From Mobula birostris (lineage: Eukaryota): a DNA stretch of 64,000 bases. Positions 20,191 to 52,988 of the stretch are shown here, one piece after another (positions within the stretch are counted from its first letter, which is position 1; every line of letters begins with the position of its first letter). A program made the position numbers and the translations under genes. Where the stretch lies: assembly GCF_030028105.1 (NCBI RefSeq), contig NC_092374.1, forward strand, positions 175,050,057-175,114,056, given 5' to 3'. Under the pieces are notes generated by a model. That model did no database searches. It saw nothing but the letters and a program-made list of their open reading frames with translations, and was not told where the DNA came from.

Positions 20191-20920
20191 GTGCGGGGAC
20201 GCCTCTCCGTGCCACGTGTGCGGGAAGCGCTTTGGCTGGACACGCTCCTGCGGGTTCACACCGGAGAGAAGCCTTTCGAGTGCACTGTCTGCAGGGAGAG
20301 AAATCACACATCCAGTACTCCTATTCAACACAGAAAATTCATAGCGGCGAGAAGACGTTTGCCTGTGCTCTGTGCTCAAGGAAGTTCTACACACCTTGTG
20401 ACCTGAGCAAACACGAGCAGATTCACACGGGCGAGAAGCCGTGTGAATGTAGCGTGCGTGCGAGGAGATTTCACACGTCCAGTAACCCGATCCAACATCA
20501 GCAGGTCCAGGCGGATGGGAAAGCGTTTGAATGTGCTGCGTGTAAAAAGCGGTTCTATACCTCCAGTCTTTTGACCCAGCATCAGAAGATTCACACCGGA
20601 GAGAAGCCTTTCGAATGGACTGTGTGCGGGGAGCGGTTTTTCCGGTCTGGTTACCTGATCGAGCATCAACGGGTTCACACCGGGGAGAAGAGGTTCAGGT
20701 GAGCAGTGTGTGAGAAGAGATGTCACACACCCAGCAACTTGAACGAGCACTTCAAAATTCACACTGGGGAGAGGCCTTTTGCATGTTCAGTGTGCAGAAA
20801 GTGCTTTTACACGGCCAGTAATCTATCGCAGCATCACGCTGAGGAGAAAGCCTTTCAGTCAGCCCTGTGCCAAAAGAGGTTCAACAGTTACAACATCAGA
20901 CAACGTACAGCGGGGAAGAT
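20191..20920 (+). pseudogene. C2H2 (Kruppel-type) zinc-finger array, nine fingers, mostly disabled
   Basis: HTGEKPF linkers. Frameshift near 20325, in-frame TGA at 20700-20702 replacing a Cys, Cys>Arg/Trp/Ser changes and two deletions. Only fingers 3 and 5 keep the full CxxC..H..H pattern. Confidence 0.88.
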
Positions 20921-23620: not shown

Positions 23621-24125
23621 GGTTCTTCCAAAATTTAAAATCTATCCCCAGCCTTGAAAAGACATGAATGATCGTGGAGTTTAAGTGAGGAAGAGGTGGT
23701 CTGAGGGAGATGTGCCAGATCGTGTGCAGAGAGGGAGTACCTGTAGGCATTATAGGGGAGATAGACATGCACCGGAGGCTGCAGTGACAAGATTCAGCTG
23801 GTGAGATAGCTAGACTGGAGCAGAGTTGCTCATTGTGCCTCCGATCACAGGTGTCTATTCCGTGAAACACCTTTCCGAGTGCCAGTTAACTCATCGCCTA
23901 CACACTGCTCCCTGCCCCTTTAGTCCTTTCCCCGGTCCCCTGGTGTGACGGTGCGGTCTCGCCATTATTTGTGATGGGAACCATCCTCTCAAAAAAACTT
24001 TGAGTTACCAACCTCCGGGCATTCTAAAACCATTAGAGAGCACAGGAACCCGCCCACGATGCCCGGACACCAGGTGAGGAAAACGGACTCGCAGGGACTG
24101 GCGTTGTGCGGATAACGAGTTGGAT

Positions 24126-24138
24126 TCTAGCTTTCAAC
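24126..24138 (-). terminator. snRNA 3' box of U1 copy A
   Basis: GTTGAAAGCTAGA lies 8 nt after the U1 3' end and resembles the vertebrate 3' box GTTTN0-4AAARNNAGA. Confidence 0.65.
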
Positions 24139-24145
24139 CGAAGGT

Positions 24146-24309
24146 CAGGGGAGAGCGCGAACGCAGTCCCCCACTACCACAAATTTTGCAGTCGAGTATC
24201 CCGCATTTGGGGACATCGCAGGCATCAGCACACCCGCAGTGCAATGGGATAGCCTCATCCTGGAACCTCAGCCTTACTGATCACCGACAGTTCCCTGCCA
24301 GGTAAGTAT
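24146..24309 (-). ncRNA. RNU1: U1 snRNA, divergent copy A
   Basis: 164 nt: 5' ATACTTACCTG, SL1 loop GATCAGTAAG, U1A loop ATTGCACTGC, Sm site AATTTGTGG, SL4 GGGGACTGCGTTCGCGCTCTCCCCTG. Confidence 0.96.
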
Positions 24310-24660
24310 GATCTCTTAGCCACCTCACCCCCGGCCAATCATGCTCATCACTCCTTACCATCCTCACGACCAGCAATTTCAAACATTTTCTTTCATTCCC
24401 TCAACACAACCAGCAGCCTACACACGCATGTATCTCCTCGAGTTAATATTCGTCTCTTGTAAATTACTGCAGCTTTTAGACATTTCGCACCCGCTTCTTC
24501 TTTGCATATTTTCCATAAAAGGAAATAGCCTCTCTGACGACCCAGCTGCAATTTTAACACTGACCACGAGGTGTCACACCACCCCGCGGTTTTATTCAGC
24601 GGCTGCGGTACGTGTGAGTGGTGTCCGCGGCTCCTGTGCGCTCAGCCTCGCTGCCCGGCC
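24310..24660 (-). promoter_or_regulatory. snRNA-type promoter of U1 copy A
   Basis: PSE-like GGTCGTGAGGATGGTAAGGAG at -62..-42, octamer-like ATGCAAAG at 24507-24500, and CTCF-like GACACCTCGTGGTCA starting at 24575. Homologous to 42015-42364. Confidence 0.75.
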
Positions 24661-25794
24661 GCGTTCTGCTCGCCCAGACCGCCAGGTTCGTACTGCGAAC
24701 TCGCAGTCACGGCTGGGGCACCCTGGAGAAAAGCCGGGGTCTTGGAGTTTCTCCGTGTATTGAAGATTCAATGAGTTGCTGTTCTGGTCACCGGAAAGAA
24801 TGAATTCAGAGTCCCCACCGGGAAGTGAACATAATGTCGCAAAATTGTTGTGACCATCTAAAGCTGGGGGTTGAACCCGGTTAAGCATCGGGGCAGGCTT
24901 TGACTGCAGTGCCAGAGAAAACCAGATGGAAAACTATGATCTGGAACGGGTAATGGTGAACATTTGCCATGGCTTTGAGTCGTACACCTGATCAGGGAAG
25001 AGGCCGTGCTGCAGGATCGGTGCTGCGCTCCCAGCTCCTCGCAGTGGGAATCGATGTGATCCAAGCAGTCAGTGAGGGTACAAAGAGCTAAATATGGTCG
25101 CTGTGTTGTTCGTAATCAAGATAAACTCAGCTGCCGGGAAACGTTTCTTACAGGTGACGGCTGGGGTCAGCATCGCAGCAATATCACGGACTGAAATCCA
25201 ATCGAAAGACGTACCCAGCAGGTCCCTACCGCATCTCGGTCTCATCGCGCATGAAGTGCCACTAGTCTTCCACTGTTTGCTCAGTAACGTGTGCACCTTG
25301 TTATTTCTTAGTTCATTTATCGTAATATCACTTTATGTGTTGTGTGTGAGTTATCTGTACTGGTTGTGCACTTGAAAAAAAAAAATCTGCAGATGCTGGA
25401 AATCGGAGCAACACACACAAGATGCTGGAGGAACTCAGCAGGCCAGGCAGTATCTATGGAAAAGAGTACAGTCGGCGTTTCGGGCCCAGACCCTGCCGTC
25501 CTAGTCTGGGGCTGGAGTGCGGAGAGTGGGTGGGACAGGATCTGTGGGTGGGAGATCCCCTCCCGCTTTCCACCATTGTCTCAGATTTAGACTCTACTGC
25601 CTTGGGAAATTTGCCACCATCCACTACGCCCTGGTGATTTTATAAACAAGGTTATCACTCAGTCTCATTTGCTCTGGGGAAAAACAATCTCAGATCATCC
25701 GATCACCCCTAATAAATGAAACCACCATTCTCGGGAAATAAATCTTATCTGCACCTTTCCTGGTTTAACTCCTGGATGACCGGATGTGTACACA

Positions 25795-26527
25795 TGTCAT
25801 AAGGAGGTGGCTGGGAACGGACCCAAGTGCCAGACACAGACACTGAAGTACTAGGGACAGGACTAGGATACAAGGCAATGGCAAGGACATGGACAGGAAA
25901 ACCAGGAACCTGGAACAGGACTGAACAAGGGAACTAGGAGCCCGGGCATGGACTCCTAGCCAGAGACTGGACAATGATCCAGTACCTGGGTCTTGCCTCT
26001 GACTTGGACCCCAGAACTAGGCAAGGACGAGGCTTGGCAGGCAGGCAGGACGAGGCAGAAATCTACAGGTGAGGCTGGAGACTTGAGGCGAGGCTTGGCT
26101 CCTCCTGGGCAGGGCGTGGATCACCACCCGACAGAGGCAAGGGACAGGAAGGGACAGAACCAACCCCAGGTAACGGCGAGACAGCCTGGCTTACCTGGGC
26201 AGAGGCAAGGGACAGGAAAGGAGCTAGGAACAGGGTGGCTCCAGGACCAGACAGCAAGACAAGGCAAGGCTGCTGGCAATGCAAGGCGAGACAAGAACTT
26301 CAGGCAAGGAAACAAGGCAGGGGAAGGGATACAAGGAGTAAGGACAAGAGCAATACAGCAGCCACACCCTGGTCTCTGAAGGTATTTATGCAGCCAGCCC
26401 CAACGAGCATCAGCTGTTTCAATTAGCTCAACAAGAACAGAAACAGGGTAGATAGGAGAACCTGGAGCAAGGGTTGATGGACCGGACCGTGAACCGGAAT
26501 ATGGACTTCACGGACCGGACTATGACA
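25795..26527 (-). mobile_element. Solo LTR (733 bp)
   Basis: TGTCAT...ATGACA termini and 5-bp TSD ACACA (25790-25794, 26528-26532). Related to the LTR at 49973. Confidence 0.8.
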
Positions 26528-26760
26528 ACACATTAAACCAAAACTGGCCTCACCCACATCTTGTTCAACTGTAACATGACATCCCAACTCCAGCCGTCAA
26601 TATCCTGACCGAAGGCCATTGCTCTCCCCACCTGTGTCATCATTGTCAGAGAACTGTGCACAATACCACTCAGTTTCTCCATCGTACAGGAATCTCTATG
26701 GCCCTCCAATTCAGTGAACGCTCCCCTCTGTACATCCGCCACCTCCCACACCTAATTCTC

Positions 26761-28343
26761 CAGCATCCTCACAGACATCCATCACTCCCACACTCCAAAC
26801 TGTCCAGCATCCTCACACCGGGATGGACATCCATCACTCCCACACTCCAAACTGTCCAGCATCCTCACTCCGGGATGGACATCCATCACTCCCACACTCC
26901 AAACTGTCCAGCATCCTCACACCGGGATGGACATCCATCACTCCCACACTCCAAACTGTCCAGAATCCTCACTCCGGGATGGACATCCATCACTCCCACA
27001 CTCCAAACTGTCCAGAATCCTCACTCCGGGATGGACATCCATCACTCCCACACTCCAAACTGTCCAGAATCCTCACTCCGGGATGGACATCCATCATTCC
27101 CAGACTCCAAACTGTCCAGAATCCTCACTCCGGGATGGACATCCATCACTCCCACACTCCAAACTGACCAGAATCCTCACTCCGGGATGGACATCCATCA
27201 TTCCCAGACTCCAAACTGACCAGAATCCTCACTCTGGGATGGACATCCATCACTCCCACACTCCAAACTGACCAGAATCCTCACTCCGGGATGGACATCC
27301 ATCACTTCCACACTCCAAACTGTCCAGCATCCTCACACCGGGATGGACATCCATCACTCCCACACTCCAAACTGTCCAGAATCCTCACTCCGGGATGGAC
27401 ATCCATCACTCCCACACTCCAAACTGTCCAGAATCCTCACTCCGGGATGGACATCCATCACTCCCAGACTCCAAACTGTCCAGAATCCTCACTCCGGGAT
27501 GGACATCCATCATTCCCACACTCCAAACTGACCAGAATCCTCACTCCGGGATGGACATCCATCATTCCCAGACTCCAAACTGTCCAGAATCCTCACTCCG
27601 GGATGGACATCCATCACTCCCACACTCCAAACTGTCCAGAATCCTCACTCCGGGATGGACATCCATCACTCCCACACTCCAAACTGTCCAGAATCCTCAC
27701 TCCGGGATGGACATCCATCATTCCCAGACTCCAAACTGTCCAGCATCCTCACTCCGGGATGGACATCCATCACTCCCACACTCCAAACTGACCAGAATCC
27801 TCACTCCGGGATGGACATCCATCATTCCCACACTCCAAACTGTCCAGAATCCTCACTCCGGGATGGACATCCATCACTCCCACACTCCAAACTGTCCAGA
27901 ATCCTCACTCTGGGATGGACATCCATCACTCCCACACTCCAAACTGTCCAGAATCCTCACTCCGGGATGGACATCCATCACTCCCACACTCCAAACTGAC
28001 CAGAATCCTCACTCCGGGATGGACATCCATCATTCCCAGACTCCAAACTGTCCAGAATCCTCACTCTGGGATGGACATCCATCACTCCCACACTCCAAAC
28101 TGACCAGAATCCTCACTCCGGGATGGACATCCATCACTCCCACACTCCAAACTGTCCAGAATCCTCACTCCGGGATGGACATCCATCACTCCCACACTCC
28201 AAACTGACCAGAATCCTCACTCCGGGATGGACATCCATCATTCCCAGACTCCAAACTGTCCAGAATCCTCACTCTGGGATGGACATCCATCACTCCCACA
28301 CTCCAAACTGACCAGAATCCTCACTCCGGGATGGACATCCATC
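26761..28343. repeat. 52-bp minisatellite, about 30 copies
   Basis: Unit cctcactccgggatggacatccatcactcccacactccaaactgtccagaat, embedded in the 3' part of a Rex-type LINE. Confidence 0.97.
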
Positions 28344-28527
28344 TCTGCCATCAGATTTCTGAACGGACAGCGAACCCAGATACACTACCTCACTACTTCT
28401 GTTCCAACAAGAGTGAATCTGCAGATGCTGGAAAGCCCAGCAACACACACAAAATGCTGGAGGAACTCAGCAGGCCAGGCAGCATCTGTGGAAAAGAGTG
28501 GACAGTCGGTTTTTCGTCTGTATATAA

Positions 28528-28720
28528 GGGGCCAGCCAGTGGTTTAGTGGCATCAGCACTGGACTTTGAGATGGATAGTCCTGAGTCTGAATCCAGCCAG
28601 ATCCCAAACCTGGGCAGCAGTGTCTGTGTGGAAGAAAGACTTGACAATATACAGTACACAGTTACAATCAGAAATGCAGTGCACTGCCTTGGTAAGTAGC
28701 AGGGCCAGTACTTGTTCACT
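28528..28720 (+). mobile_element. tRNA-derived SINE head
   Basis: A-box-like gtggtttagtgg and B-box-like gagtctgaatcc. Confidence 0.45.
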
Positions 28721-28859
28721 CAGATCTCTACTGGCTGTGAACAGTGGGCTGGTGCTACTGAGTGTCTGCTCACCAGCTCTTGTTAATGTGGAAACACAAC
28801 CCTCCCACAGCTTTAGAAAGAGTCGTTACGACACACGCACACACACACACACACACACA

Positions 28860-31800
28860 AGGTATGAACCCACGACCCACGGTATGACAGGAAAGATACT
28901 AGCATTGGTGGAATATTGGCTGACTGGCAGGAAACTAAGGAGGCCACTTCTGGTTGACTGCCAATGACTAGTGACGTTCTGCGGGGGTCGTTGTTGGGAC
29001 CGTTTCTTTCCATATTATATATCAATGATTTGCATGATGGAATTGAAGGCTCTGTGGCCGGGTTTGCGGATGATATGAAGATAGGTAGAGGGCAGGTAGA
29101 GTTGAGGAAGCAGAGTGTCTGCAGAAGGACTTAGGAAGATAAAGAGATTGGACAAAGAAGTGGAAGGTGGAACAGAGTGAAGGGAAATGTATGGTTATGC
29201 ACTTTGATAGAGGAATGAAAACAAAGGCTATTTCAAAACAGGGAGAAAAGTTCAGCAACCAGAGGTGAAAAAGCACTTGGGATTCCTTGTGCGGCATTCC
29301 CTAAACATTAACTTGTGGGTTGAGTCGGTGGTGAGGAGGGCCAGTGGAATGTTGGCATTCATTTCGAGAGGACTAGGGTGTAAAAACAAGGATGAAATGC
29401 CGAGACTTTGTAAAGCACTGGTCAGATCGCACATGGAGCATTGGGAGCACTTTTATAGACAATAGACAATGGACAATAGGTGCAGGAGTAGGCCATTCGG
29501 CCCTTCGAGCCAGCACCGCCATTCACTGTGATCATGGCTGATCATCCACAATCAGTATCCAGTTCCTGCCTTATCCCCATAACCTTTGATTCCGCTATCT
29601 TTAAGAGCTCTATCCATCTCTTTCTTGAAAGCATCCAGAGACTTGGCCTTCACAGCCTTCTGGGGCAGAGCATTCCATACATCCACCACTCTCTGGGTGA
29701 AAAAGTTTTTCCTCAACTCTGTTCTAAATGGCCTACCCCTAATTCTTAAACTGTGGCCTCTGGTTCTGGGCTCACCCGTCAGCGGGAACATGCTTCCTGC
29801 CTCCAGCGTGTCCAATCCCTTAATAATCTTATACGTTTCAATAAGATCCCCTCTCTGCCTTCTAAATTCCAGAGTATACAAGCCCAGTCACTCCAATCTT
29901 TCGACATATGACAGTCCCACCATCCCAGGAATTAACCTTGTGTACCTACGCTGCACGCCCTCAATAGCAAGAATGTCCTTCCTCAGATTTGGAGACCAAA
30001 ACTGCACACAGTACTCCAGGTGTGGTCTCACCAGGGCCCTGTACAGCTGCAGAAGGACCTCTTTGCCCTTATACTCAATATGAAGGCCAGCATGCCATTA
30101 GCTTTCTTCACTGCCTGCTGTACTTGCATGCTTACTTTCAGTGACTAATGTACAAGAACACCTAGATCTCGTTGTGTTTCCCCTTTTCCTAACTTGACTC
30201 CATTTAGATAATAATCTGCCTTCCCGTTCTTACCACCAAAGTGGATAACCTCACATTTATCCACATTAAACTGCATCTGCCCACTCACCCAGCCTGTCCA
30301 AGTCACCCTGCATTCTCATAACATCCTCCTCACATTTCACACTGCCACCCAGCTTTGTGTCATCGGCAAATTTGCTAATGTTACTTTTAATTCCTTCATC
30401 TAAATCATTAATATATATTGTAAACAGCTGCGGTCTCAGCACTGAACCCTGTGGTACCCCACTAGTCACCGCCTGCCATTCTGAAAGGGACCCGTTAATC
30501 GCTACTCTTTGTTTTCTGTCAGTCAGCCAATTTTCAATCCATGTCAGTACTCTGCCCCCAATACCATGTGCCCTAATTTTGCTCACTAATCTCTATGTGG
30601 GACTTTTATAAAGGCTTTCTGAAAGTCCAGGTACACTACATCCACTGGCTCTCCATTGTCTATTTTCATAGTTACATCCTCAAAAAATTCCAGAAGATTA
30701 GTCAAGCACGATTTCCCCTTTGTAAATCCATGCGGACTCGGACCAATCCTGTTACTACTATCCAAATGTGTCGTAATTTCATCTTTTATAATTGACTCCA
30801 GCATCTTTCCCACCACCGACGTCAGGATAACTGATCTATAATTCCCTGTTTCCTCTCTTCCTCCCTTCTCGAAGAGAGGGACAACATTAGCCACCCTCCA
30901 GTCCACAGGAACCGATCCTGAATCTATAGAACATCAGAAAATGATTACCAATGCGTCCACGATTTCTAAAGTCACCTCCTTAAGTACTCTGGGATGCAGA
31001 CCATCAGGTCCCAGGGACTTATCAGCCTTCAGACCCAACAGCCTATCCAACACCATTTCCTGCCTAATATAAATTTCCTTCAGTTCCTCAGTTACCCCAG
31101 GTCCTTTGGCCACTATTATATCTGAGAGATTGTTTGTGTCTTTCCTAGTGAAGACAGATCCAAAGTACCTGTTCAACTCGTCTGCCATTTCCTTGTTCCC
31201 CATAATAAATTCACCTGCTTCTGTCTTCAAGGGCCCAATTTTGGTCTTAACTATTTTTTTCCTTTTCACGTACCAAAAGAAGCTTTTACTATCCTCCTTT
31301 ATATTCTTGGTTAGTTTACCTTCGTACCTCATTTTTTCTCCGCGTATTGCCTTTTTAATTACCTTCTGTTGCTCTTTTAAAGTTTCCCAATCCTCCGGCT
31401 TCCCACTCGTCTTTGCTATGTTATACTTCTCTTTTATTTTTATATTGTCCATTACTTCCCTCGTCAGCCACAGCCTCCCCTTACTCCCCTTAGGATTCTT
31501 CTTCCTCTTTGGAACGAACAGATCCTGCACCTTCCGCATTATTCCCAGAAACACTTGCCATTGCTGTTCCACTGTCATCCCTGCTAGAGTATTGTTCCAT
31601 TGAACTTTGGCCAGCTCCTCCCTCATAGCAACATAGTTCCCTTTGTTCAACTGTAAGACTGACACTTCCGAGTTTCCCTTCTCCCTCTCAAACTGTAGAT
31701 CGAAGCTTATCATATGATGGTCACTTTTGGGCCCATTATCTACGAAAAGAAGTAATCACATTGGAGAGGGTCCAGCGGAGGTTTGTGAGAATGATTCTGG

Positions 31801-31990
31801 GAATGAAACGGTTAATGTATGAGGAGCACTTGATGGCTGTGGGCCTGTACTCACCGGAGCTTAGAAGAATGAGGGGAGATCTCACTGAACACTTTCAAAT
31901 CCTGAAAGGCCTACTAGAGTGGATGTGAAGAGGATGTTTCCTTTAGTGATGGAGTCTAGGACCAGAGGGCACAGCCTCAGAATGGATGGA
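28860..31990. mobile_element. CR1 (+; 28860-29454 and 31722-31990) interrupted by a second CR1 (-; 29455-31721)
   Basis: The + copy reads through the junction gagcactttt|gggccc. The inserted copy has a (tagacaa)n tail at 29456 and RT peptides DWRVANVVPLF..GKSCLTNLLEFF and SGVPQGSVL. CACTTTT is duplicated at both ends. Confidence 0.85.
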
Positions 31991-32979
31991 CATCAGATTT
32001 CACAGTTCAAAGTAAATTTACTGAAGTACGTATATGTCAGCATATGCAACCCTCAGAATCATTTGCGGACATTTGCAGTAATAAGACCATAAGACACAGG
32101 AGCAGAATTAGGACATCTCACCCGTCGAGTCTGATCCACCATTCAATCATGACTGATCCCGTTCTTTCCTCAACCCCAGTTCCCGGCCTTCTCCCTGTAA
32201 CCTTTGAAGCCGTGTCCAATCAAGAACCCATCAATTTCCGCTTTAAAGACACCCAAGGACCTGGCCTCTTCCCGGTAATTACAAGCAGGAAAATGGCATC
32301 AGTGAAATGCCAGTCGCAATTGGAGAGACAAGCAAGCAACGTGCAAACGACAACGTACTGTCCAAATACAAAATGAGAAAAAAGAACAAAGTTACAGTAG
32401 TAAATAATCATAAATATCGATAAAATGAGTTGTGGGGTCCCTTAAAGTGAGTCCATTGATTGTGGGAGCAGTTCAGTGATAAGATGAGTGAAAGTATTCC
32501 CACTGGTTCAAGAGCTTGATGGTTGAGGGGCAATAACTGTTCCTGAATCTGGTGGTGTGGGTCCTAAGGCTCCTGTACATTCTTCCTGATAGCAGCACGA
32601 GAGGACGGCATGACTGGGTGGAGGCCTCGATGACGGACTTTGTGTAGATGTGCTCAGTGACCGAGAGGGCTTTACCCGTAATAGACCGGTCTGTAACCAC
32701 CACTTTCTGTAGACCTTTCCATTCAAGGGCATTGTCCCTTTAGAACAGAGATGAGGAGGAATTTCTTTAGACAGAGAGTGATTCTGCGGAACTCAATACC
32801 ACAGACAGCTGTGGAGGCCAAGTCATTTAAAGTGTAAGGGTGTCAAAGGTTATGGAGCAAAGGCAGGAGAGAGGGGTTGAGAAGGATAATAAATCAGCCA
32901 CAATGGAAAGGCAGCGCAGAGTCGATGGGCTGAATGGCCTAATTCTGCTCCAATGGCTTATGGTCGTTAAACGGCGAAC

Positions 32980-33320
32980 AGAACGAGGCTGGGTTGAGGG
33001 CGGATAAGATCTCCGACCGGATCCCAGTCACATGCTTAAAGAAAACCCGGGGCGCCCTGACGCCTAGTGGGCAGCATCAGAAGTGCAGGTAGCATCGTCG
33101 GAGAGCTGCATCCTATTAGGGGAAGATATGCAAATACAAGTAAATTTCGACTCGTTAAAAGACAGTCGTCAGTCACAAGAAAGGAAAGTTAAAGCTTTCA
33201 GGAATATTTGTGTTTAAACTAGTTCCAGTAAGAAGAATCCATGGACGTTTTGCAACTACAGCTCCTGTTGATATTAAGGTGTGATGCATTCGATTGGAAG
33301 AGAGAGCTGTCAAGGTTCCG
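32980..33320 (+). promoter_or_regulatory. Orphan snRNA-type promoter cassette, paralogous to the U1 promoters, with no U1 downstream
   Basis: GACGCCTAGTGGGCA at 33059, perfect octamer ATGCAAAT at 33128-33135, PSE-like GCTCCTGTTGATATTAAGGTG at 33261-33281 and GATTGG at about 33292. Order and spacing match the U1 upstream regions. Confidence 0.65.
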
Positions 33321-33332
33321 AGAAAGGAGAGT

Positions 33333-33722
33333 GGGAAGATCCGGCGGTGCTGATGTTTCTCGGCGGACCAGGCGTTCTTAACGTGACAGTGGACGGGGAC
33401 GGCTTCGCGCTGTGTTGTGGAGGAACTTGGGTTTTGATGCGATTCCCAGTTCTCCGGCGTTGCTATTAGAGAGCGGCTCTACCTACTGTTCTTATTAGGG
33501 CAGAGTGAACGAATATGGCGGGGAAGATCTGGTGCGGATGCGGTTCCCAGCGCTCAGGCGTTCTTGTTAGAGCGCGGCTATACCAACTGTTCTTATTAGG
33601 GCAGAGAGAACGATGATGGCGAGGAAAGTCTGGTGCTGATGCGATTCCCAGCGCTCAGGCGTTCTTGTTAGAGCGCGGCTATACCAACTGTCCTTACTAG
33701 GGCAGAGAAAACGAAGGCAGGG
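33333..33722 (+). repeat. 101-bp tandem repeat, three good copies plus one diverged 5' copy
   Basis: Anchor c(a/c)ggcgtt at 33369, 33454, 33555 and 33656. The unit includes gtgctgatgcgattcccagcgctcaggcgttcttgttagagcgcggctataccaactgttcttattagggcagag. Confidence 0.85.
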
Positions 33723-33884
33723 AACACGATCTCCAGCTGATGCAGGCGTGGATCCTGGACTTCCTCCACCAACGGCAATGGAAAAGAAGATGGCGAGGCA
33801 GAGCCGTGATCGGTGAAGAAGGCTGGGGAGATCAGCGCTTCGACTTGTGGGGCTGGAAATCAAGAACGCCGTCAGATTGTGTCC

Positions 33885-34790
33885 GTGGTTAGAAGGCGGC
33901 ACCCTGGGCAACGGGGGGAAAATGTCTCCAATGTCGCTCTCACCCTGAGGGTCGGCTTCATATGTGCCTGCATCAGGTTGTGTGTGGATCCCGAATTCCC
34001 CCCCCCCAATAAAATATACTTTATTCAGAAGGATTCGAAGTAAAATTCTTTGCAAAAACCATTAGTTGATTCCTTGTCTGTTTGTGACCTCCGATTAGTT
34101 AGCGCAAACGGTGCATTACAGCGGCATTTTTTTTTAGGGCTAAATCGGCTTAAAATGCGCTAATTTACAGAACGCCAGCAGCTGCGTTGCCGAGGACTGT
34201 TCCCGGGGACGCACACGGAGACCAACATCCGGTGCTGCTGGCAGATCATCAATTCGGTGAAAGACGCGCTTTGGTCGGCCCGAAACTTGGTGGTCTGCCA
34301 GCACACGGAGATGTCCGTGACTGAATGCTGCCGACTGGCTCACTCTCGCCTGCAGGAGTACGTGCTGAGGGATGCACTCAAGCTTGGTGCGGCCACTGCG
34401 AAGGCCCGTTGGGGAAGGACCACAGTTCATCACCCGTGGGAGTGGGGGGGGGGTCGGGTGGGGAGGAGACCTACCCTCATCAGCGGTGTGGACAGATAAT
34501 CAACATGGTGCCCCAGGATTGGGTGGAATTGTTAATTTGTTAAAAGAATTAGGGCCAACGCCTGCCTTTATTGTTGATAATTTTATTGTAAAGTCTTAAC
34601 TCTTGACCAAGGGTTGAGAGTAAACGAACGATTTATTGTAAACATCTTTTATTTGTATATGAACAGAGTCAACGCATAAGTTGATTGTAAATAACTTTAT
34701 TGAATAAGGACTCAGGGTCAACGAATGTTCTTTTATATGTATATAACTTTATTTTGTAATACTTCTGGATAAAGTATTTTTGGAGAAAAA
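33885..34790. mobile_element. Cluster of Tx1 ORF2 C-terminal/3' UTR fragments on both strands
   Basis: NVALTLRVGFICACIRLCVDP (+, about 33930), KDALWSARNLVVCQHTEMSVTECCRLAHSRLQEYVLRDALKLG (+, 34257), an overlapping minus-strand tail at 34010-34300, and polyA at about 34780. Confidence 0.8.
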
Positions 34791-35439
34791 AATATTTAAA
34801 AAATTACAGAATACAGGCAAAGTTCAGGGTTATATATTAGTATAAATTGCTCATTCGCCAAAATCAACCTTTACTCGAGAGCCGATCCGCCATCATGGAA
34901 ATCGGTACGCGACACCACGACCCACGAGCGCGGCCAGCCTCAGCGACAGCAAGCGGAGCAAAAGGGCAGGGCAGCTCTGTTTTGACTCTTTCAAAGGGTG
35001 CCCCACGGGTCACCTCGTTGTCTAGTTCAAAATAAAGATGTTGCAATAAATTATCCCGTGATTCTCAAACCCTAATCAGGAATAAAACCTATTTACAATA
35101 CAACCAGGCGTTGACTTGCTTTCCTTTACCGTCTATACCTTTCCAGCCACTCCTGTGGCACTATGTTGATTCATCTATGCACACCGCTGATGAGCGGTGT
35201 ACTCCTCACCGCCCGACCCCTCCCACTCCCGCGGGTGACGAACCCTAAACTGGCCCTTCCCCAACGGCCTTGGTACACAATATGCTGGTGGAAGGCAGCA
35301 GGCCGGGCGGCATCTATGGGAAGAGTCGACGTTTCGGGCCGAGACCCTTCATAATGGATTGCTGTGGGTCAAGGCGGAGGATTTCGCCGGTTACAATGAC
35401 GTCACATGCCGCAGGCCGGCAGAAATTACAATATTTACG

Positions 35440-36990
35440 CGAGGCGCCGCTGTCGCACAGCCCCTCTTCGCCGACGCAACGCAGCAAGAAGGAACGGTAA
35501 CGGTACAAATGTTTAACCCCTACATACCAGTCGTTCACGTCCTCACATTCCTGGCGCTGTATGTGGGCAAATGTGTGGATGTCAACGACAATCCAGGAAT
35601 ATGGAGCAGCAAAAGGCAGGTCAGGGTGAAGCTGAGGGTGGATGCCAGCGGCTGTCATCCACCCAGCCTCAGTCCTCGCAATCGGAGGCAACCAGGGCTT
35701 CCTGGTTTATGCCGGGCAATCCAAGGTGTGACGCAACTGCGGCAAGGCGGGGCACATCGCATCCCAGCGCAAGGCTGTGGTGTGTAGGAAGCTCGCCAAG
35801 GACTGTACGCAGGCCAGGTCCTGCAACCTCTGCGGGCAGGCGGGCCACCTGTACAGGGCCTGTCCGAAACGTGCGGGATCCTACGTACAGCTGTCCAGGG
35901 GAGGTGATGCCATCGAAGAGGCTCCGGCTGGTTTGGAGGTTCCCGTCACCTCTGAAGAGGCGCCTCCAGAAACAACGGAGGAAGACGCATCCACCCTGAG
36001 CCCCCCCCCCTTGCAGAACACCCGGGACCCACTGCTTGACGAGGAGGGGTCATGGGGTGGGGGGAGAACTGAGGGGGGAAGAAAGAGCATGGAACGTGGT
36101 TGCCAACCGCAAAATGGCCTAGAAGGCTCCGCCAAAAAGGCAGTCGACGGAGAAAGGGCAGTGGAATCTAAAGCATCCTTTGGTCACCTGTCGAACTCGG
36201 AGGAGGAAGGCGGTAGGCGGCAGAGGAAGAGGTGGGCAAGAGTCGAGAGAACGGTGAAAGTCTGCCTGCCACTCCCCAAATACAGGAGATGGAGATCAGC
36301 AGAGCCCCTCAGCTCCGCTCCGGGAAACCGGGAGCAGTAGCGCATCTGGCGGCCCGCAGCCAGAAGGAGAGGCAGCCCCGGGAGACCCTCCACGTTCAGA
36401 GCCGGCGCTGCCTCCCCACAGTACCTGAACCCACAGCAGGTGGAAAGACTTCACCAAGGCCGTGGGCATGAGGACTCAGGACTGCGAGGGGGAGGACGAG
36501 GGTCTGTAAAGGATGACGACCTTAAGCTAACATCCTTAAACGTTCTCATTTGCGTCAGTACTTGAACACTGAATGCCGACGTGAGCTTCCTCCAACAGTG
36601 CGGCCTGCAGCACCTCCGCTACTACCGGAGGTGGTCCCAGGGTTTGTCGGTGTGGTCGGGGGACAATGATTGTCGGGCCTCCGACCTGGGGATTCTGCTG
36701 CGGGGAGGCAACTTCTCAATCACCCAAGTTAAAGAGGTGGTTGCGGGGCGCCTCCTGGTAGCAGGCGTCAAATACCGGGGCACTCCGCTCCGGCTGATCA
36801 ACGTGTACGCCTCCCCCGTGCGGAGCGAGCGGCGGGCCGACCTCGAGCGGCTCCCACAGCTGCTGGTGACCGTCCCGGCCGGTCGCTCTGGCCGGAGACT
36901 TCATTGATGCGGCTGGACGGTACCTGTAGGCTCCTGAGGGAAACGGTGAAGACAGCCAAGCTGCGCAACGCCTTTGGCACCCCAAGCCAC
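35440..36990 (+). mobile_element. Tx1-clade LINE 5' part: ORF1 (gag-like with CCHC knuckles) and the start of the ORF2 endonuclease, frameshifted
   Basis: VTVQMFNPY..GIWSSKRQVRV, CNLCGQAGHLYRACP, and EN motifs GRLLVAGV..LRLINVYASP. Confidence 0.85.
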
Positions 36991-39340
36991 CTGGTCACGA
37001 TCGGACGACTCAGCCCGCTCCTCTGGATAGACTTCCTCCTGACTAACTGGTCATTAGAAATTGGAGGGAACATTGCAGAGCAGGTCCTGTGAGCCAAATC
37101 CCTCCCTACCATTGAGTGAATTTATCCAGGAGCAAAGATCCCTACTATTCAGTGTGAACGTTGTGGTAAGGTGAGACCGAAAGCAACATCCAGGCAAGGA
37201 CAGTCTGGGGCGGCTGTAGTTAAGTGAGACTGTCGGAGATACCTCTGCTTACTACAGGCAAGATAGGCCTGGGTGACTGAGGCAGTGTGAGCTCAGGCCA
37301 GACAAGTGAGGCATCTATAATGAGACTTTTACAGAAAGGACTTCCTAAAGCATAGTGTCCCTTTACACAACGAGGACGGACAAGATAGGTGAGACAGGCA
37401 TAATGGAAGCTTGTGAAACTAAGGGACAATTGTCTTTACTACTATTAAAATAACATCGGCTGTCAGCTTGAAGTTCGTCTGACTTTTAACACCTCCGTGA
37501 CAATTAAGGAACTCAAACATATGCAATAATTAACTTCAGTAACTGACCAGCCAACTCTGTGTACCAATAGCAGTTTCTTGCCCTGCCTTCAGAACAGTGT
37601 GGGTGAGAGGGGCCATGCTTGTGCACCAGTAAAATAAAAGGAATGTTTGAGTTGTGAGAGTGTCTGTATTCTGCGCCCAGTTATTTTTGTTATATTAATT
37701 ATTTATTTTGATATTGGCGATGACATCAGAATCAGGATATAGTTTAATATTGGGAAATTTGTTGATTCCAATTCTGATTCCGAAAGATACCCGCCATCCT
37801 GACTGCACTCTCTTCTCACTACTACCGTCGGGTAAGAGGTACAGCGGCCTTAGGCTCCTCACAGCCAGGATCAAGAAGAGTCCCTACTCTATAACCATCA
37901 GGATCCCGAAACAGCTTTGATAATTTCACCTAACATAACTCTGAGTTGGACCTGCAACTTACAGACCCATTTCCACAGACACTATGCAACTCAGGTTCTC
38001 AGTATTACCTTTTAAATTTGCACAATTTGTCTGGAGGAAGGTGAAACGGCCTCTGTAGTGTTTCATCCCTAGCAGCTGTGTGACAGAGGACCCTCTGATC
38101 TCTGTTCCCAGAGACAAACACCGTGGGCTGATGGCAGATCACCAACTTGGTGAAAGGCAAACTTTGTTTCAGGGGCGACTGAGGAGAACCCAAGGTCAGG
38201 ACACAGGCACGGAGACTGAGTTGGGATGCTTGTGCAGACGTGAACGTAGAACAGCAAACAGGAGGAATCTTGACGCGGAGCTCTGATCAGGAGTCTTGAC
38301 ACGGAGACGGGTTTTCATGGAATATCTCGAAACTGGAGCTGAACTTAGAACTAACGGTTCTAAGCGGCAGGGAAACGAAATTATCACACGGGAATAGACC
38401 AACGAACTGGCATCCAGTGGTTATGACGCCGAGATTTTTACACTGCAGTTCTTGATGGAGACCAGGTATGCTGTCATCAAGGGAATTAGCAGTAAATGGG
38501 AAATTAAGGATTGGAATCAAGGCATAATCAAAGGAAATTAGGGGCAAAATAGGGGATTAACAATCGGGACCATGGCAAACTTCGGTCACCCAAAACTTGT
38601 TGGTCTACCAGCACATCGTGATGTCCGTGGAGGAACGCTGCTGATTGGCTGATTCCAGGCTCTAGGGGTCCGTGCTGCGGGATAACCTGAAGCTCAGTGC
38701 TGCCACCTCGAGGGGTCAGTAGGGAATGACCATGGCGTAGGGTTCTTCACCAACAGGTGTAGGAGGGGTGGGTGGGGAGGTAGCCCCTGATTTTTGTAGT
38801 ATTTAATTTAAAACCCCAGAATGCGACTGAACAGGTAATTTTGTAGTTTTTAAAAATAACATTTATTTTGTTTACATTTTTTCTTTTGCACATTGGTTGT
38901 CAGTCTTGTTTATGTATAATTTTTCGCAAATTCTCTTGTACTTTAGTTTCCTGTGAATGGAAGTAAATGTATCTCGTGGCAGTGTACGATAGTGTGTTAG
39001 ATAGTACTTTGATAATGAATTTCGCTTCGTTCTACCGTATGAAATGCTGTGTTGCGTTAGTGAGCCTACTTCCATTACTCTTCCAACAGTGTGAAATACC
39101 GCGTTCATTTCTGAATGTTGTAACAATCCTCATTCAGATTTAAGTTCTCAGCTTTAGATCGAAAGAAGTCACATTGTGCTGATATCAGTTCTGTGATGTT
39201 ATAGCCACTGCTCCGGATGGCAGACCCTCAATCGGTTTGTTCCTTCAATGAACCCTCAATAGCTTGAGACACCCTAAAATCCGACTTGCCTGCGTCCTGG
39301 GGACAGAATCCGCGCCCGGATCCGTCACACGCCCGCCATC

Positions 39341-40330
39341 TGAACAGAGTCAACGCAAAATTTTATTGTTAATAACTGTATTGAATAAGGACTCAGTCAA
39401 CGAATGGTTTTCTTTTCCTGTATGTAATTATTTTTATTTTGTAATATTTCTGAATAAAGTATTTTTGGAAAAAAAATCTGTTGTGCTAAGACACCTAGTG
39501 GCCGGTTTCAGAGCTGCAGGTGGCGGGTCAGAGACTGTTTCTTTTTAGGGAAGATATGCAAATCAAATGATGATGAAATTTTGAAAGGCTGTGATATTTT
39601 AAAGCAAAAGTAAGATAAAGGATGATCCACATTTGTGTTTCTTAGCACCAGTTGAGCGTAAAACGTTGGAGCGGCGGAGGATGAGAGGTGACCTGATAGA
39701 GGTGTGTACGATGATGAGAGGCATTGATCGTGTGGATAGTCAGAGGCTTTTGCCCAGGGCTGAAATTGCTGCCACAAGAGGACACAGGAAAGACGCTCTG
39801 TGGTCGGCCCGAAACTTGATGGTCTGCCAGCTGACAGAGATGTCCGTGACTGAATGCTGCCGACTGGCACACTCTCGTCTGCAGGAGTACGTTCTGAGGG
39901 ATGCACTCAAACTGGGTGCAGCCACCGCGAAGGCCCGGTGGGGAAGGACCACAGTTTAACGTTCATCACCCGTAGGAGGGGGAGAGGTTGGGTGGGGAGG
40001 AGACCGACCCTCATCAGCGGTGTGGACAGATAATCAACATGGTGCCCAAGGAGTGGGTGCAATTGTTAATTTGGGAAAGTATTAGAGCCATTGCCTGCCT
40101 TTATTGTTGAAAATTTTGATTGTTAATAAGTTTTAACACTTGACCAAGAGTTGAGAGTAAACGCATGATTTACTGTAAACATCTTTCATTTGTAAATGAA
40201 CAGAGTCAACGCAAAATTTTATTGTTAATAACTGTATTGAATAAGGACTCACAGTCAACGAATGGTTTTCTTTTCCTGTATGTAATTATTTTTATTGTGT
40301 AATATTTCTGAATAAAGTATTTTTGGGAAA
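39341..40330 (+). mobile_element. Two Tx1 3' ends (39341-39478 and about 39785-40330), plus a CR1 3' fragment (about 39650-39785)
   Basis: 39341-39478 duplicates 40196-40330. Peptide KDALWSARNLMVCQLTEMSVTECCRLAHSRLQEYVLRD, with polyA tails. Confidence 0.85.
39490..39640 (+). promoter_or_regulatory. Truncated snRNA enhancer cassette (distal part only)
   Basis: GACACCTAGTGGCC at 39490 and ATGCAAAT at 39556-39563. Aligns to 42106-42260, then is cut off by CR1 sequence. Confidence 0.65.
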
Positions 40331-40719
40331 AAAAAAGTAGGCTGGCGTCAGCCCAGGCTCTGGGTGTTGAGGAGTCTGATGGCTTGGGGGAAGAAACTGT
40401 TACATAGTCTGCCACATACATATTGACCAGGAACATCAAGAAGGACTGTGCCGACTGGCTGATCCCGGTCTGCAGAAGCACATCTACAGCAGAGGGACGC
40501 ATTGAAGCTTGGCGCAGCCTCCGCAAGGGCCGGTTGGGGAAGGACCCCGGTGCAGAGTTCTACTCCTATGGGAGAGGGAGGGATCGGTAGGGAGAGGGAG
40601 GCCCTCAATTATTGCATTTGATTTAAAACTAGTGCCAGGTGAGTGGGTGCAGTACTATAACAGTACGTAAAACTTTGAACATGCATGTAAAATGGAAAAG
40701 CATTGTAAGCTTGTAGGCA

Positions 40720-41210
40720 CAGCTCAAATGCCATCTATAAAATTTAGTGACGACACAACCTTTGTTGGCAGTATTTCAGATGGTGACAAGAGAGCATACG
40801 GGAGTGAGATATATCAGCTAATTGAGTGGTGTCGAAGCAAGAACCAGTCCTCATAGAGGGACCAGAGGTGGAAAGAGTGAACAATTTCAAGTTCCTGGGC
40901 GTCAATATCTCTGAGGATCTGACCTGGACACAACACATCGATGCAGCTGCAAAGAAGGCAAGAGCGTCTATATTTCATTAGGCGATTGAGGACATTGGTA
41001 TGTCAACAAACCACTCGCAAGTCTCTACAGATGTACCGTGGAGAGCATTCTAACTGGCTGCATCACCGTCTGGTATGTGTGTGTGTGTGTGGGGGGGGGC
41101 GCGGTGGGCTACAGCATTAGATCGAAGTAAGGTGCAGAGAATTGTAAACAGTCAGCTCCATCGTGGGTTCTAGCCTCTGCAGTACCCAGGACATCTTCAA
41201 GGAGCGATGA
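40720..41210 (+). mobile_element. Rex1/Babar-type LINE fragment
   Basis: YKFSDDTT and EVERVNNFKFLGVNISEDLTWTQH-type sequence. Confidence 0.75.
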
Positions 41211-42014
41211 CTCAAAAAACAACTCGGCCCTCTCACGCAAAACAACAGCAGAAACATCGACCCTCCCCCCCCCGCCACTTGCACCACCAAAAGCAACGAC
41301 CCCCTCCCCCCACGATGCAATCAATAGCAAAGCCCCCAAAGAGACCTTGAGTCCGTGAAAAACTACAGTCGGTCGCAGTATTTTGGTGTCAGACAAGCTC
41401 TCTCGTACTTGAGGGAGAGCGAGGTCGTTCCTGCAACAACCAAGAGCGGGAGACCAGCAGCTCACTGTTTCAATGTTACAACCTTCCGTGTGGCTGATCC
41501 CGGTCAATCGCCCACTCCCACCCACAGATCCTCTAGAAGTGATTCTCCTCACTTCACCCCGGGACCTGATGCAGACCAGGCCCAGGACCGCGTGGAGCTC
41601 CGATCACATCCTCCTCTGCAGTCACTCACTGCTCTGCCTTCAGGAAGGCGCTTCCTACACCACTCCCACCCGCTTCAGGGTCTGAGGGTCTGATCCGTCC
41701 CTCCGGGCACCGATCTCGTACATCTGCTTCCTATCACGGTCCTTATTCAGATTTACCTTTCCAGCTTTAGACGGAACGGAGTCTAAGCGGGGTACAGTAA
41801 ATATAATTCAGTAATGTTATGGTCACTGATCTTCAATTCCTCAATCCTGAAATCAACCCTTCCCACTGACACAATAGCATATGCAAATGATCCGTTCCCT
41901 CATTGAATCCTCAATACTCCGACATACTTTAGCCCCCGGCTTTGCCCCAGCTGTCCTCCAGGAGCACCAACTAAGACTGCGTGCACATAGTGACAGCCCA
42001 AAATCCCTTGTTGA

Positions 42015-42364
42015 AGGGGACGAGGCCGAGACTGGACTGGAGCCGCGGACCTTCACCAGTCTCACGCCTGCAGCTGATGAATGAACCGCCGCGGCCGGAT
42101 ATTGTGACACCTAGTGGCCAGCCAGAGAACTGCAGGCGGGTGTCAGGCCCTTTCCTTTTTTGGTAAATATGCAAAGAAGTAACGGATGCGAAATGTTTGG
42201 AAGCTGTAGTAATTTACAAGATGCAAATTATAATCCATGCAGTACATTTGTGTGTGTGGGCTATTTCCGTTGAGGAACTGCAATGTAAGGTTTGAAATTC
42301 TAGGTCGTGTGGATGTTAAGGAGTATTGTGCATGATTGGCAGGGGGTGAGGTGGCTAAGAGATC
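42015..42364 (+). promoter_or_regulatory. snRNA-type promoter of U1 copy B
   Basis: CTCF-like GACACCTAGTGGCCA at 42106, ATGCAAAG at 42169, perfect ATGCAAAT at 42221-42228, and PSE-like GGTCGTGTGGATGTTAAGGAG at 42303-42323 (-62..-42). Confidence 0.8.
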
Positions 42365-42528
42365 ATACTTACCTGGCAGGGAACTATCGGTGATCAGTAA
42401 GGCCGAGGTTCCAGGACGAGGCTATCCCATTGCAGTGCGGGTGTGCTGACGCCTGCGATGTCCCCAAATGCGGGATACTCGACTGCAAAATTTGTGGTAG
42501 TGGGGGACTGCGTTCGCGCTCTCCCCTG
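42365..42528 (+). ncRNA. RNU1: U1 snRNA, divergent copy B
   Basis: 164 nt with the same architecture as copy A and 5 differences from it. The U1A loop reads ATTGCAGTGC. Confidence 0.96.
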
Positions 42529-43214
42529 ACCTTTTTCAACCAAAAATAGGATGTGAGTGCGGTATCTGGGGTGAGGAACGTTTCTGAGCGATAACCCACA
42601 AACTCTGATCCCCTACATGCTACCCGACCTGCTGAATTGTTCCAGCATTCCATGTGTTTCTTCCGTTCCTCATCCTACTTCACACTGCGTTCTCGGCGTA
42701 CAGGATGCAGAGAGAGGGAGTGAGAAAAGCCGCAGAGTGAGTCTTCGTTGGGTCCACAAGAGCCGGGCTGAGTCTGAGGTGCCGAAGGTCTCGACCCTGT
42801 CAGTCCGTGCCTCCATGTGACTCCATGAGCAGACTGGGTGGGTAAAGCGGTTGATTCTGGGGAGAGGGAGAGAGGCAATACAGAATGGATACACACCCTT
42901 CTGCACAGCCAATCTCAGTGGCATCACAGCTGGCCCTAATTTCCTGTGTTACGCTCGCATCCCGCCAAGCCTCACCTCTTCATGTAACTAAGAAAATGCT
43001 TCTTATAGTATGCTATTGCAACTTCCCGAACCGATTTACTAACCACCTTTTGCGTGAAAATATTTCCTCTCAGGTGTCTTTCCTCTCACACCCGAACCTA
43101 TGCCCCTTAATTTTGGACTCTCTTACCCTTAAGGTAAAGTCACCATACACCTTATCCATGCTTCACATAAGGCGCTGCACTTGTATAACGTCGCCGCTCA
43201 TTCTCGTCTGTTAC

Positions 43215-52914: not shown

Positions 52915-52988
52915 AGGCACCACTGAGACTTGAACTCAGGATCTCCTGTTTACTAGACAGGCGCTTTAACCAACTAAGCCATGGTGCC
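52915..52988 (-). tRNA. tRNA-Thr (AGT)
   Basis: GGCACCATGGCTTAGTTGGTTAAAGCGCCTGTCTAGTAAACAGGAGATCCTGAGTTCAAGTCTCAGTGGTGCCT. All four stems pair, A and B boxes are present, and a TTTT tract lies about 16 nt downstream. Confidence 0.93.

What the first reader, a model, noticed from the sequence alone, without database searches (positions are those of the whole stretch)
24146..42528. Pair of divergent U1 snRNA genes with a rewritten but fully base-paired stem-loop 1
Seen: both copies keep the 5' splice-site recognition end (ACUUACCUG), the Sm site and SL4. SL1 reads GGAACU(A/G)UCGGU-GAUCAGUAAG-GC(C/U)GAGGUUCC, against GGGAGAUACCAU-GAUCACGAAG-GUGGUUUUCCC in human U1. Most stem positions differ, yet both arms still pair. 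SL2 has a U-A>C-G change and SL3 has U-A>G-U. The U1-70K loop keeps GAUCA..AG. Known: vertebrates carry variant or developmentally regulated U1 genes (e.g. mouse U1b, human vU1). Inference: the covariation points to selection on structure, so this could be a functional variant U1 class. It could equally be the ordinary major U1 of this lineage, which cannot be decided from this window.
Basis: partly seen in the sequence, partly recalled or inferred. Interest (0 to 1): 0.72.

Follow-up and report, generated by a model that had tools for sequence, protein, structure and literature searches.

The report
Minority U1 snRNA genes, rewritten stem-loop 1
The window holds two real, intact-looking genes for a minority version of the U1 splicing RNA, whose first hairpin has been rewritten by paired compensating mutations; the same genome also carries a conventional U1 in a tandem array, so this is a well-made example of a known kind of snRNA variant, and whether it is expressed could not be tested.

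Summary
Rfam U1 (RF00003) matches 24146-24309(-) at 149 bits and 42365-42528(+) at 148 bits, both full length.

This SL1 is not the genome's only or commonest U1 type.
- Type A has a human-like SL1. It has 12 copies at C6:197.4-197.65 Mb (11 identical, one differing at one base), 10 of them direct repeats mostly ~16.35 kb apart. It also gave rise to most processed pseudogenes.
- Type B is the window's type. It has only 4 copies, all at C6:175.07-175.66 Mb.
- Type C is a sister type with 5 intact-looking genes at C6:184.6-189.4 Mb.

A and B differ at 11 of 33 SL1 positions but at 1 of 131 elsewhere (p=5e-8). Five of 11 stem pairs changed on both sides, and 97.7% of cells still pair.

All three types keep a distal octamer element, a PSE-like box and a 3' box inside otherwise unalignable flanks. 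Their flanks are CpG-rich, unlike pseudogene flanks.

Best reading: functional genes of a second U1 lineage that make an ordinary U1 snRNP, possibly with different expression or U1-70K affinity.

Expression was not tested. U4 shows one type only, so there is no zebrafish-style dual spliceosome. This is a new member of a known kind.

The parts
24146..24309 (-). U1 snRNA gene, copy 1 (type B). Private changes C40U, C53U and C86U, all CpG to TpG; the two that fall in pairs leave G-U wobbles.
   Evidence: RF00003 149.3 bits, full length; alignment A1; differences listed
24262..24294 (-). Stem-loop 1 of copy 1 (variant stem, loop GAUCAGUAAG)
   Evidence: Folds as 6 bp + bulge + 5 bp + 10-nt loop, -10.7 kcal/mol
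24350..24371 (-). PSE-like proximal promoter element of copy 1, -62 to -41
   Evidence: Read; aligned with the same box in all intact U1 genes
24500..24524 (-). Distal element of copy 1: TTCC..GGAA palindrome plus octamer-like ATGCAAAG, about -215 to -191
24562..24576 (-). Far-upstream conserved box TGACACCTCGTGGTC (about -267 to -253), shared by A, B and C genes
   Evidence: factor unknown
24125..24139 (-). 3' box of copy 1 (GGTTGAAAGCTAGAA), starting 7 nt after the RNA end
   Evidence: fits the snRNA 3' box consensus GTTTN0-3AAARNNAGA (established knowledge); aligned
42365..42528 (+). U1 snRNA gene, copy 2 (type B). Private changes G22A in the SL1 bulge and C71G in the U1A-binding SL2 loop.
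   Evidence: RF00003 148.0 bits.
42380..42412 (+). Stem-loop 1 of copy 2
   Evidence: -12.9 kcal/mol, z -3.5
42303..42324 (+). PSE-like element of copy 2, -62 to -41
42153..42177 (+). Distal element of copy 2 (TTCC..GG palindrome plus ATGCAAAG), -212 to -188
42105..42119 (+). Far-upstream box TGACACCTAGTGGCC
42534..42551 (+). 3' box-like sequence of copy 2 (…CCAAAAATAGGA). The last base departs from the consensus; the near-identical paralog L017 has AAAAATAGA.
33058..33282 (+). Third U1-type promoter between the two genes, with the same three boxes (33058-33072, 33111-33135, 33261-33282) but no U1 body behind it. Probably a dead U1 unit.
   Evidence: No Rfam match downstream. The downstream 101-bp repeat is homologous to DNA about 370-490 nt downstream of a type C U1 gene.

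Best explanation
The two features are intact RNA polymerase II snRNA genes of a second U1 lineage, which I call type B. With its sister type C, this lineage has at least 9 intact-looking genes on the same chromosome. It coexists with the genome's conventional U1 (type A, in a tandem array). The RNA should act as an ordinary U1. It has the same 5' splice-site pairing end, the same Sm site, SL3 and SL4, and an SL1 loop that keeps the U1-70K motif GAUCA..A.G. Only the SL1 stem has been rewritten. Five of its 11 base pairs are replaced on both sides, so the helix, the bulge and the loop size are all kept. U1-70K reads the loop through its RRM and touches the stem mainly through the phosphate backbone, so such a stem should still assemble into a U1 snRNP. 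What differs between the classes is most likely regulation, because the promoter flanks are class-specific. A quantitative difference in U1-70K affinity or snRNP assembly is also possible. Shown here: gene integrity, covariation, minority status by gene count, conserved promoter and 3' box motifs, and CpG-rich flanks. Inferred: transcription, snRNP assembly, and any stage- or tissue-specific use.
For: Full-length RF00003 matches far above threshold. Genome census: three SL1 classes, with the variant 5' pattern found 12 times and the canonical one 21 times, and type B only 4 times. In SL1, 5 of 11 pairs changed on both sides and 97.7% of cells are paired, versus no double changes in SL2-SL4; the covariation score exceeds 500/500 shuffles and all slid controls. 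A and B differ at 11/33 SL1 positions versus 1/131 elsewhere, Fisher p=4.9e-8. All classes fold into the same SL1 shape. Between classes, promoter flanks are only 41-57% identical, yet all keep the far-upstream box, the octamer element, the PSE-like box and the 3' box. Copy 1 versus copy 2 is 76% identical upstream but shows 5/164 differences in the RNA. Upstream CpG o/e is 0.56-1.16 for intact A/B/C genes (0.92 and 0.59 for the window copies) versus 0.05-0.33 for processed pseudogenes, as expected for promoters unmethylated in the germ line. Literature: the U1-70K N-helix lies along the SL1 stem backbone (PMC9371917). A single SL1 stem change (C25G) raised U1-70K binding fourfold in a human vU1, and the SL1/U1-70K interaction is needed for Sm-core assembly (PMC10870369). 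Type B/C has G at that position with a compensating C40. Variant U1 isoforms with developmental regulation are widespread (PMC4291461; 10.1101/858944).
Against: In the run index no run held more than 0.75 of the sampled words, and most held only the conserved 3' half. A metagenome scan for the variant SL1 found nothing. Type B has left no processed pseudogenes, against about 14 for A and 4 for C-like, so it may be rare in the germ line. Three of the four B copies carry private changes, two of them in the U1A-binding loop (copy 2 C71G; L022 G68A/C69U). This hints at relaxed constraint. Similarity of the RNA-coding part could be kept by gene conversion rather than selection. Copy 2 is a mosaic of L017-like upstream and L022-like downstream DNA. 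A promoter with the same boxes sits in the window without any U1 body, so conserved boxes alone do not prove an active gene. No relatives' genomes were available, so the age and conservation of the variant SL1 are unknown.
Confidence: 0.6

Rival explanations
1. The roles are reversed. The tandem-array type A is an oocyte/embryo ('maternal') U1, and the scattered B/C genes encode the main somatic U1 of this animal. In that case the window's SL1 would be the ordinary adult U1.
For: In zebrafish the maternal-type snRNA genes lie in dense repeats and the somatic type is scattered. Maternal and somatic U1 differ by 11 nt, all but one in one stem-loop, and the maternal U1 is the one closer to human (supplement). 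Here too the array type is closer to human in SL1, and A differs from B by 12 nt, 11 of them in one stem-loop. A germ-line or embryo-restricted type A would also explain why most processed pseudogenes derive from A.
Against: There is no parallel dual set for other snRNAs. U4 has a single intact type, and U5 shows only small differences in its 3' hairpin. The zebrafish system involves all five major snRNAs. In mouse, fly and Xenopus the minor isoforms are the embryonic ones and the major isoform is expressed throughout. C-like pseudogenes exist, so that class is present in the germ line.
Confidence: 0.15
2. The window copies are silent or decaying gene copies. They look intact only because gene conversion and recent duplication within the U1 family keep copying good sequence into them. 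On this view the SL1 differences are neutral drift in the least constrained part of U1.
For: SL1 is a hot spot of change inside every class (A_L016, A_L018 and C_L021 differ from their class mainly in SL1). There are private hits in the U1A loop in copy 2 and L022, and three CpG decays in copy 1. Type B has no pseudogene offspring. Mosaic flanks show ongoing exchange. A bodiless promoter next door shows that units in this cluster do die. Many human vU1 genes are poorly expressed or inactive in splicing.
Against: Drift alone would not keep 97.7% of SL1 cells paired through five double changes. Promoter boxes and the 3' box are kept in flanks that are otherwise unalignable. Flank CpG content is 2-4 times that of true pseudogenes, and the promoterless L018 drops to pseudogene level. 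Copy 1 has 3 changes in 164 nt against L017, while its upstream 300 nt are 24% diverged.
Confidence: 0.2
3. The pattern is an assembly or chance artefact.
For: None found.
Against: There are nine intact-looking genes in two subtypes at separate loci, plus independent decayed pseudogenes with the same SL1 on four chromosomes.
Confidence: 0.01

Closest known systems
Human variant U1 (vU1 / RNVU1) genes at 1q12-21 versus RNU1 at 1p36
   Same: Both are sequence-divergent U1 paralogs with their own snRNA promoters, clustered apart from the canonical repeat on the same chromosome. Some human variants have a strongly altered SL1, and a stem change at position 25 alters U1-70K binding (PMC10870369; PMC3561869 listed). 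A tRNA gene lies nearby here as well (tRNA-Thr at 52915-52988). That human U1 loci are interspersed with tRNA genes is from my own knowledge.
   Different: Human vU1s differ at scattered positions, often including the 5' end, the loops and the Sm site, and many are inactive in splicing. Here the changes are almost confined to the SL1 stem and are compensatory, and all known protein- and RNA-contact motifs are kept (except C71G in copy 2).
Zebrafish maternal-type versus somatic-type U1 (Pagano et al., bioRxiv 10.1101/858944)
   Same: Two U1 classes in one genome differ by 11 nt, nearly all in one stem-loop, with co-evolved stem pairs and unchanged pre-mRNA binding sites. One class is in tandem repeats and the other is scattered.
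   Different: In zebrafish all five major snRNAs have two types, and expression was measured. Here U4 has one type and expression is unknown. The zebrafish alignment as stored compresses its dots, so the stem-loop concerned cannot be placed, though the visible maternal/somatic differences appear to lie around SL2.
Mouse U1b, Xenopus embryonic U1 and sea-urchin/Drosophila U1 isoforms
   Same: Minor U1 isoforms are encoded by separate genes, and their use changes during development (PMC4291461).
   Different: Those isoforms differ by a few nucleotides. From my own knowledge, the mouse U1b differences lie mainly in SL2. A stem with five compensatory pair replacements is a larger and more structured difference.

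Membership tests
U1 spliceosomal RNA (Rfam RF00003) | Covariance-model score above the curated gathering score over the full model | tested here: met
   149.3 and 148.0 bits against 69.5, model 1-166
U1 spliceosomal RNA (Rfam RF00003) | 5' end ACUUACCUG for 5' splice-site pairing | tested here: met
   Invariant in all 12 intact genes aligned
U1 spliceosomal RNA (Rfam RF00003) | SL1 with a 10-nt loop carrying the U1-70K motif | tested here: met
   The loop is GAUCAGUAAG. Only positions 33/34 differ from the Rfam consensus GAUCAaGAAG, and these also vary among the genome's other U1 types. Binding itself was not tested.
U1 spliceosomal RNA (Rfam RF00003) | SL2 loop AUUGCAC (U1A site) | tested here: inconclusive
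   Copy 1 has AUUGCAC. Copy 2 has AUUGCAG, i.e. C71G at a consensus-conserved position.
U1 spliceosomal RNA (Rfam RF00003) | Sm site and SL4 | tested here: met
   AAUUUGUGG and SL4 are identical to the canonical type
Pol II snRNA gene | PSE near -55, distal octamer element near -200, and a 3' box within about 20 nt of the RNA end | tested here: met
   Motif-level alignment across 13 genes. Copy 2's 3' box has one departure from the consensus. Factor binding was not tested.
Developmentally regulated / variant U1 isoform | A distinct sequence class coexisting with a canonical class in the same genome | tested here: met
   Types A, B and C
Developmentally regulated / variant U1 isoform | Transcription, and expression that differs between stages or tissues | not testable with these tools
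The run index gave no holder of the variant words.
Zebrafish-type alternative (maternal) spliceosome | Two sequence types for each major snRNA | tested here: not met
   U4 has three identical intact genes plus decayed copies. The 12 U5 genes differ only in the 3' hairpin. U2 and U6 were not examined.

The most novel reading that the evidence does not exclude
The two SL1 versions are kept apart by selection while the rest of the RNA is homogenised among all U1 genes on this chromosome. This would give two flavours of U1 snRNP that differ in U1-70K affinity or in the U1-70K-dependent Sm-core assembly route, and that are used at different stages or in different tissues. Points in favour: the near-identity of SL2-SL4 across classes despite saturated flanks; the mosaic character states (type B shares columns 96 and 124 with A but its SL1 with C); a single U1-70K gene; and the human C25G result.
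Probability: 0.15. Interest if true: 0.6.

Novelty: new member of a known kind. Interest (0 to 1): 0.35.

Why it matters
If expressed, these genes would be a clean natural experiment on U1 stem-loop 1. The RNA is identical to the canonical one except for a helix rebuilt from different base pairs, with position 25/40 flipped, a site where a human variant changes U1-70K binding. That would allow a test of whether the SL1 stem sequence matters for U1-70K binding and snRNP assembly. It would also allow a test of whether vertebrates outside mammals, frogs and teleosts use distinct U1 classes. As it stands, this is an ordinary kind of finding: snRNA multigene families with variant members are well known.

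Tried and rejected
1. Expression by reads. The look-up of sequencing runs with copy 2 (kind rna) and with the type B consensus copy L017 (kind any) listed only runs holding 0.43-0.75 of the sampled words. That is essentially the conserved 3' half, from many coded organisms, and no run looked like the source species. Only two local scripts re-read them: on the stored alignment, a sandbox BLAST of the window against three loci of the same genome.
2. Conservation in other species. No eukaryotic relatives are searchable here. A metagenome-contig scan for the variant 5' end + SL1 pattern gave 0 hits, which says little.
3. A co-evolved protein partner. Only one locus matches the U1-70K N-terminal domain PF12220, so there is no paralog to pair with the variant SL1. 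The search works exon by exon, so this is weak negative evidence.
4. A genome-wide dual snRNA system as in zebrafish. This is not supported for U4 or U5.
5. An RNA behind the orphan promoter. Rfam at E<=1 found nothing relevant.
6. The zebrafish supplements. I tried to place the maternal/somatic U1 differences, but the stored text compresses the dots, so the stem-loop could not be fixed.
7. The organism was not identified.
Full report
**Observation**

A scan of the whole window against Rfam finds two full-length U1 snRNA matches and one tRNA.
- U1 at 24146-24309 on the minus strand: 149.3 bits.
- U1 at 42365-42528 on the plus strand: 148.0 bits. The gathering score is 69.5.
- tRNA-Thr(AGU) at 52915-52988.

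The two U1 genes lie head-to-head and transcribe away from each other. The only similarity between their surroundings is an inverted repeat. It covers the RNA, about 230 nt upstream and about 5 nt downstream: 274 nt at 91% plus 89 nt at 82%.

Each SL1 folds alone into 6 bp, a one-base bulge, 5 bp and a 10-nt loop.

**Is this the genome's ordinary U1?**

The window is G000:C6:175,050,057-175,114,056 of a 4.0-Gb assembly. RF00003 over the whole genome gave 42 scored matches. Exact-pattern searches for the 5' end plus the 5' arm of SL1 gave 12 hits for the variant arm, 21 for a human-like arm, and no further class. Reading the sequences gives three classes.

- **Type A.** The SL1 is close to the human one. 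It has 12 copies at C6:197.43-197.65 Mb. Ten are direct repeats, most of them 16.35 kb apart, and two are inverted. Eleven copies are identical; one inverted copy (L013) differs at one base. There is one further gene with its own promoter at C6:80.9 Mb (L016) and a promoterless copy on C9 (L018).
- **Type B.** This is the window's type. It has four copies only: the two in the window and two at C6:175.65-175.66 Mb (L017, L022).
- **Type C.** It has the same rewritten stem with small differences, plus A96 and U124. Five genes look intact at C6:184.65, 188.40 and 189.34-189.35 Mb.

Dispersed, mutated, promoterless or truncated copies are mostly A-derived (about 14). Four are C-like and none is B-like.

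By gene count and by pseudogene offspring, that test is not met.

**The covariation**

I aligned 12 intact genes and counted pairs on the Rfam structure.
- The SL1 helix has 5 of 11 pairs changed on both sides: G-C/A-U, G-C/C-G, A-U/U-G or C-G, A-U/U-A and C-G/G-C.
- 97.7% of SL1 cells are paired.
- SL2, SL3 and SL4 have no double change.
- The covariation score beats all 500 shuffles and all slid controls.

Type A and type B differ at 11 of the 33 SL1 positions and at 1 of the other 131 (Fisher p=4.9e-8).

SL1 is also where members of one class differ from each other (L016, L018, L021). Part of the pattern may therefore reflect a stem whose sequence, though not its pairing, is weakly constrained.

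**Are they genes or relics?**

All intact A, B and C genes share the same layout:
- a TGACACC..GTGG box near -260;
- a TTCC..GGAA palindrome joined to an octamer-like ATGCAAA(T/G) near -200;
- a PSE-like box at -62 to -41;
- a 3' box 7-16 nt after the RNA.

Outside these boxes the 300 nt upstream are only 41-57% identical between classes, which is near alignment noise. The two window copies are 76% identical upstream, and copy 2 is 97% identical to L017.

Against those flanks the RNA-coding parts are almost frozen. Copy 1 differs from L017 at 3 of 164 positions.

CpG observed/expected in the 500 nt upstream is 0.56-1.16 for every intact gene. The window copies score 0.92 and 0.59. Seven processed pseudogenes score 0.05-0.33, and the promoterless L018 scores 0.26. 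This is what promoters left unmethylated in the germ line look like.

Together this argues that the genes are maintained, but it does not prove it.
- Gene conversion is active in the family. Window 41535-42549 is 98.2% identical to L017, while 42281-44033 is 96.2% identical to L022. Copy 2 is therefore a mosaic whose junction lies at the gene.
- Copy 2 carries C71G in the AUUGCAC loop that U1A recognises, a position conserved in the Rfam consensus. L022 has two changes in that loop.
- Copy 1 has three private CpG-to-TpG changes. Two fall in base pairs and leave G-U wobbles, and one is in a bulge.

**Mechanism**

The pre-mRNA pairing end, the Sm site, SL3 and SL4 are unchanged, and the SL1 loop keeps GAUCA..A.G. 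The RNA should therefore recognise the same 5' splice sites and enter the same particle.

Published work shows that the U1-70K RRM binds the loop. A basic N-terminal helix lies along the stem's phosphate backbone, and a C-terminal tail moves with the mid-stem (PMC9371917). That fits a stem that may change sequence as long as it stays a helix.

The stem is not entirely irrelevant, however. In a human variant U1, C25G alone raised U1-70K binding fourfold, and the SL1/U1-70K interaction is needed for Sm-core assembly and U1 levels (PMC10870369). Types B and C have G25 with a compensating C40.

Only one locus matches the U1-70K N-terminal domain, so both SL1 forms would meet the same protein. The most likely differences between classes are therefore regulation (class-specific promoter flanks) and perhaps affinity for U1-70K.

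**Expression and conservation**

These could not be tested.
- The run index returned only runs with 0.43-0.75 of the sampled words, essentially the conserved 3' half.
Two local scripts re-read stored data.
- A metagenome scan for the variant SL1 pattern found nothing.
- No relatives' genomes can be searched here.

**Comparison with what is known**

Variant U1 genes are well known. Examples are human vU1, mouse U1b, Xenopus embryonic U1, and sea-urchin and fly isoforms. snRNA families evolve in concert, and minor isoforms are mostly embryonic.

The nearest parallel is zebrafish. There, maternal and somatic U1 differ by 11 nt, all but one in one stem-loop, with co-evolved stem pairs. The maternal type lies in tandem repeats and the somatic type is scattered.

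That parallel leaves open that the array type A is the oocyte/embryo form and B/C the somatic form. It is weakened because U4 has a single intact type here, and U5 varies only in its 3' hairpin. In zebrafish all five major snRNAs come in two types.

**Verdict**

These are real, intact-looking genes of a minority U1 lineage with a compensatorily rewritten SL1 stem. That makes them a new member of a known kind.
- Functional variant genes: 0.6.
- Silent or decaying copies kept similar by conversion: 0.2.
- Reversed roles (B/C somatic, A maternal): 0.15.

Interest is moderate. It would rise if RNA data showed class-specific expression, or if the two stems bound U1-70K differently.

Noticed in passing
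window 33058-33743 (+): A third U1-type promoter sits between the two genes. It has the far-upstream box at 33058-33072, the octamer element at 33111-33135 and a PSE-like box at 33261-33282, but no U1 body. It is followed by a 101-bp x 2.8 repeat (33436-33716). Parts of that repeat and of the DNA before it match sequence about 370-490 nt downstream of a type C U1 gene (L014). The simplest reading is a dead U1 unit that lost its RNA-coding part, not a new snRNA.
   Followed up: partly
G000:C6:197431091-197651578 (L002-L013, L031): This is the canonical U1 array. It has 10 direct copies, most 16.35 kb apart, and 2 inverted copies about 70 kb further on. Eleven of the 12 RNAs are identical (L013 differs at one base). 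Rfam found no other RNA gene in the first 10 kb of one unit.
   Followed up: partly
L038 = G000:C12:100704300-100705500 (-): A chimeric retro-pseudogene. The first ~50 nt of type A U1 are joined directly to what looks like the 5' part of U2 snRNA (…CTTTTGGCTAAGATCAAGTGT…). This would fit template switching during retroposition.
   Followed up: no
window 52915-52988 (-): tRNA-Thr(AGU), 70 bits, lies 10 kb from U1 copy 2. From my own knowledge, human U1 loci are also interspersed with tRNA genes.
   Followed up: no
window 26774-28350 and 50255-51037: Two long minisatellites: 52 bp x 30 at 95% identity, strongly C-rich on the plus strand, and 25 bp x 31 at 89%. Long ORFs at 27395-28207 and 50235-51179 are probably repeat artefacts.
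   Followed up: no
window 20251-20818 (+): There are five 84-nt-spaced repeats encoding C2H2 zinc-finger linker-like units (…CACACCGGAGAGAAGCC…). Several look degenerate.
   Followed up: no
L023 = G000:C6:184653099-184653262: This type C copy has a compensatory change in helix H (G12A with C122U). It also has changes in the region next to the Sm site and in SL4, so it is either still under structural selection or decaying.
   Followed up: no
G000:C9:94.41-96.07 Mb and C9:68.43 Mb (L045-L056): There are twelve U5 genes on one chromosome. The lone copy at 68.4 Mb differs from the cluster only in the 3' hairpin. U4 has three identical genes at C20:35.87-35.90 Mb.
   Followed up: partly
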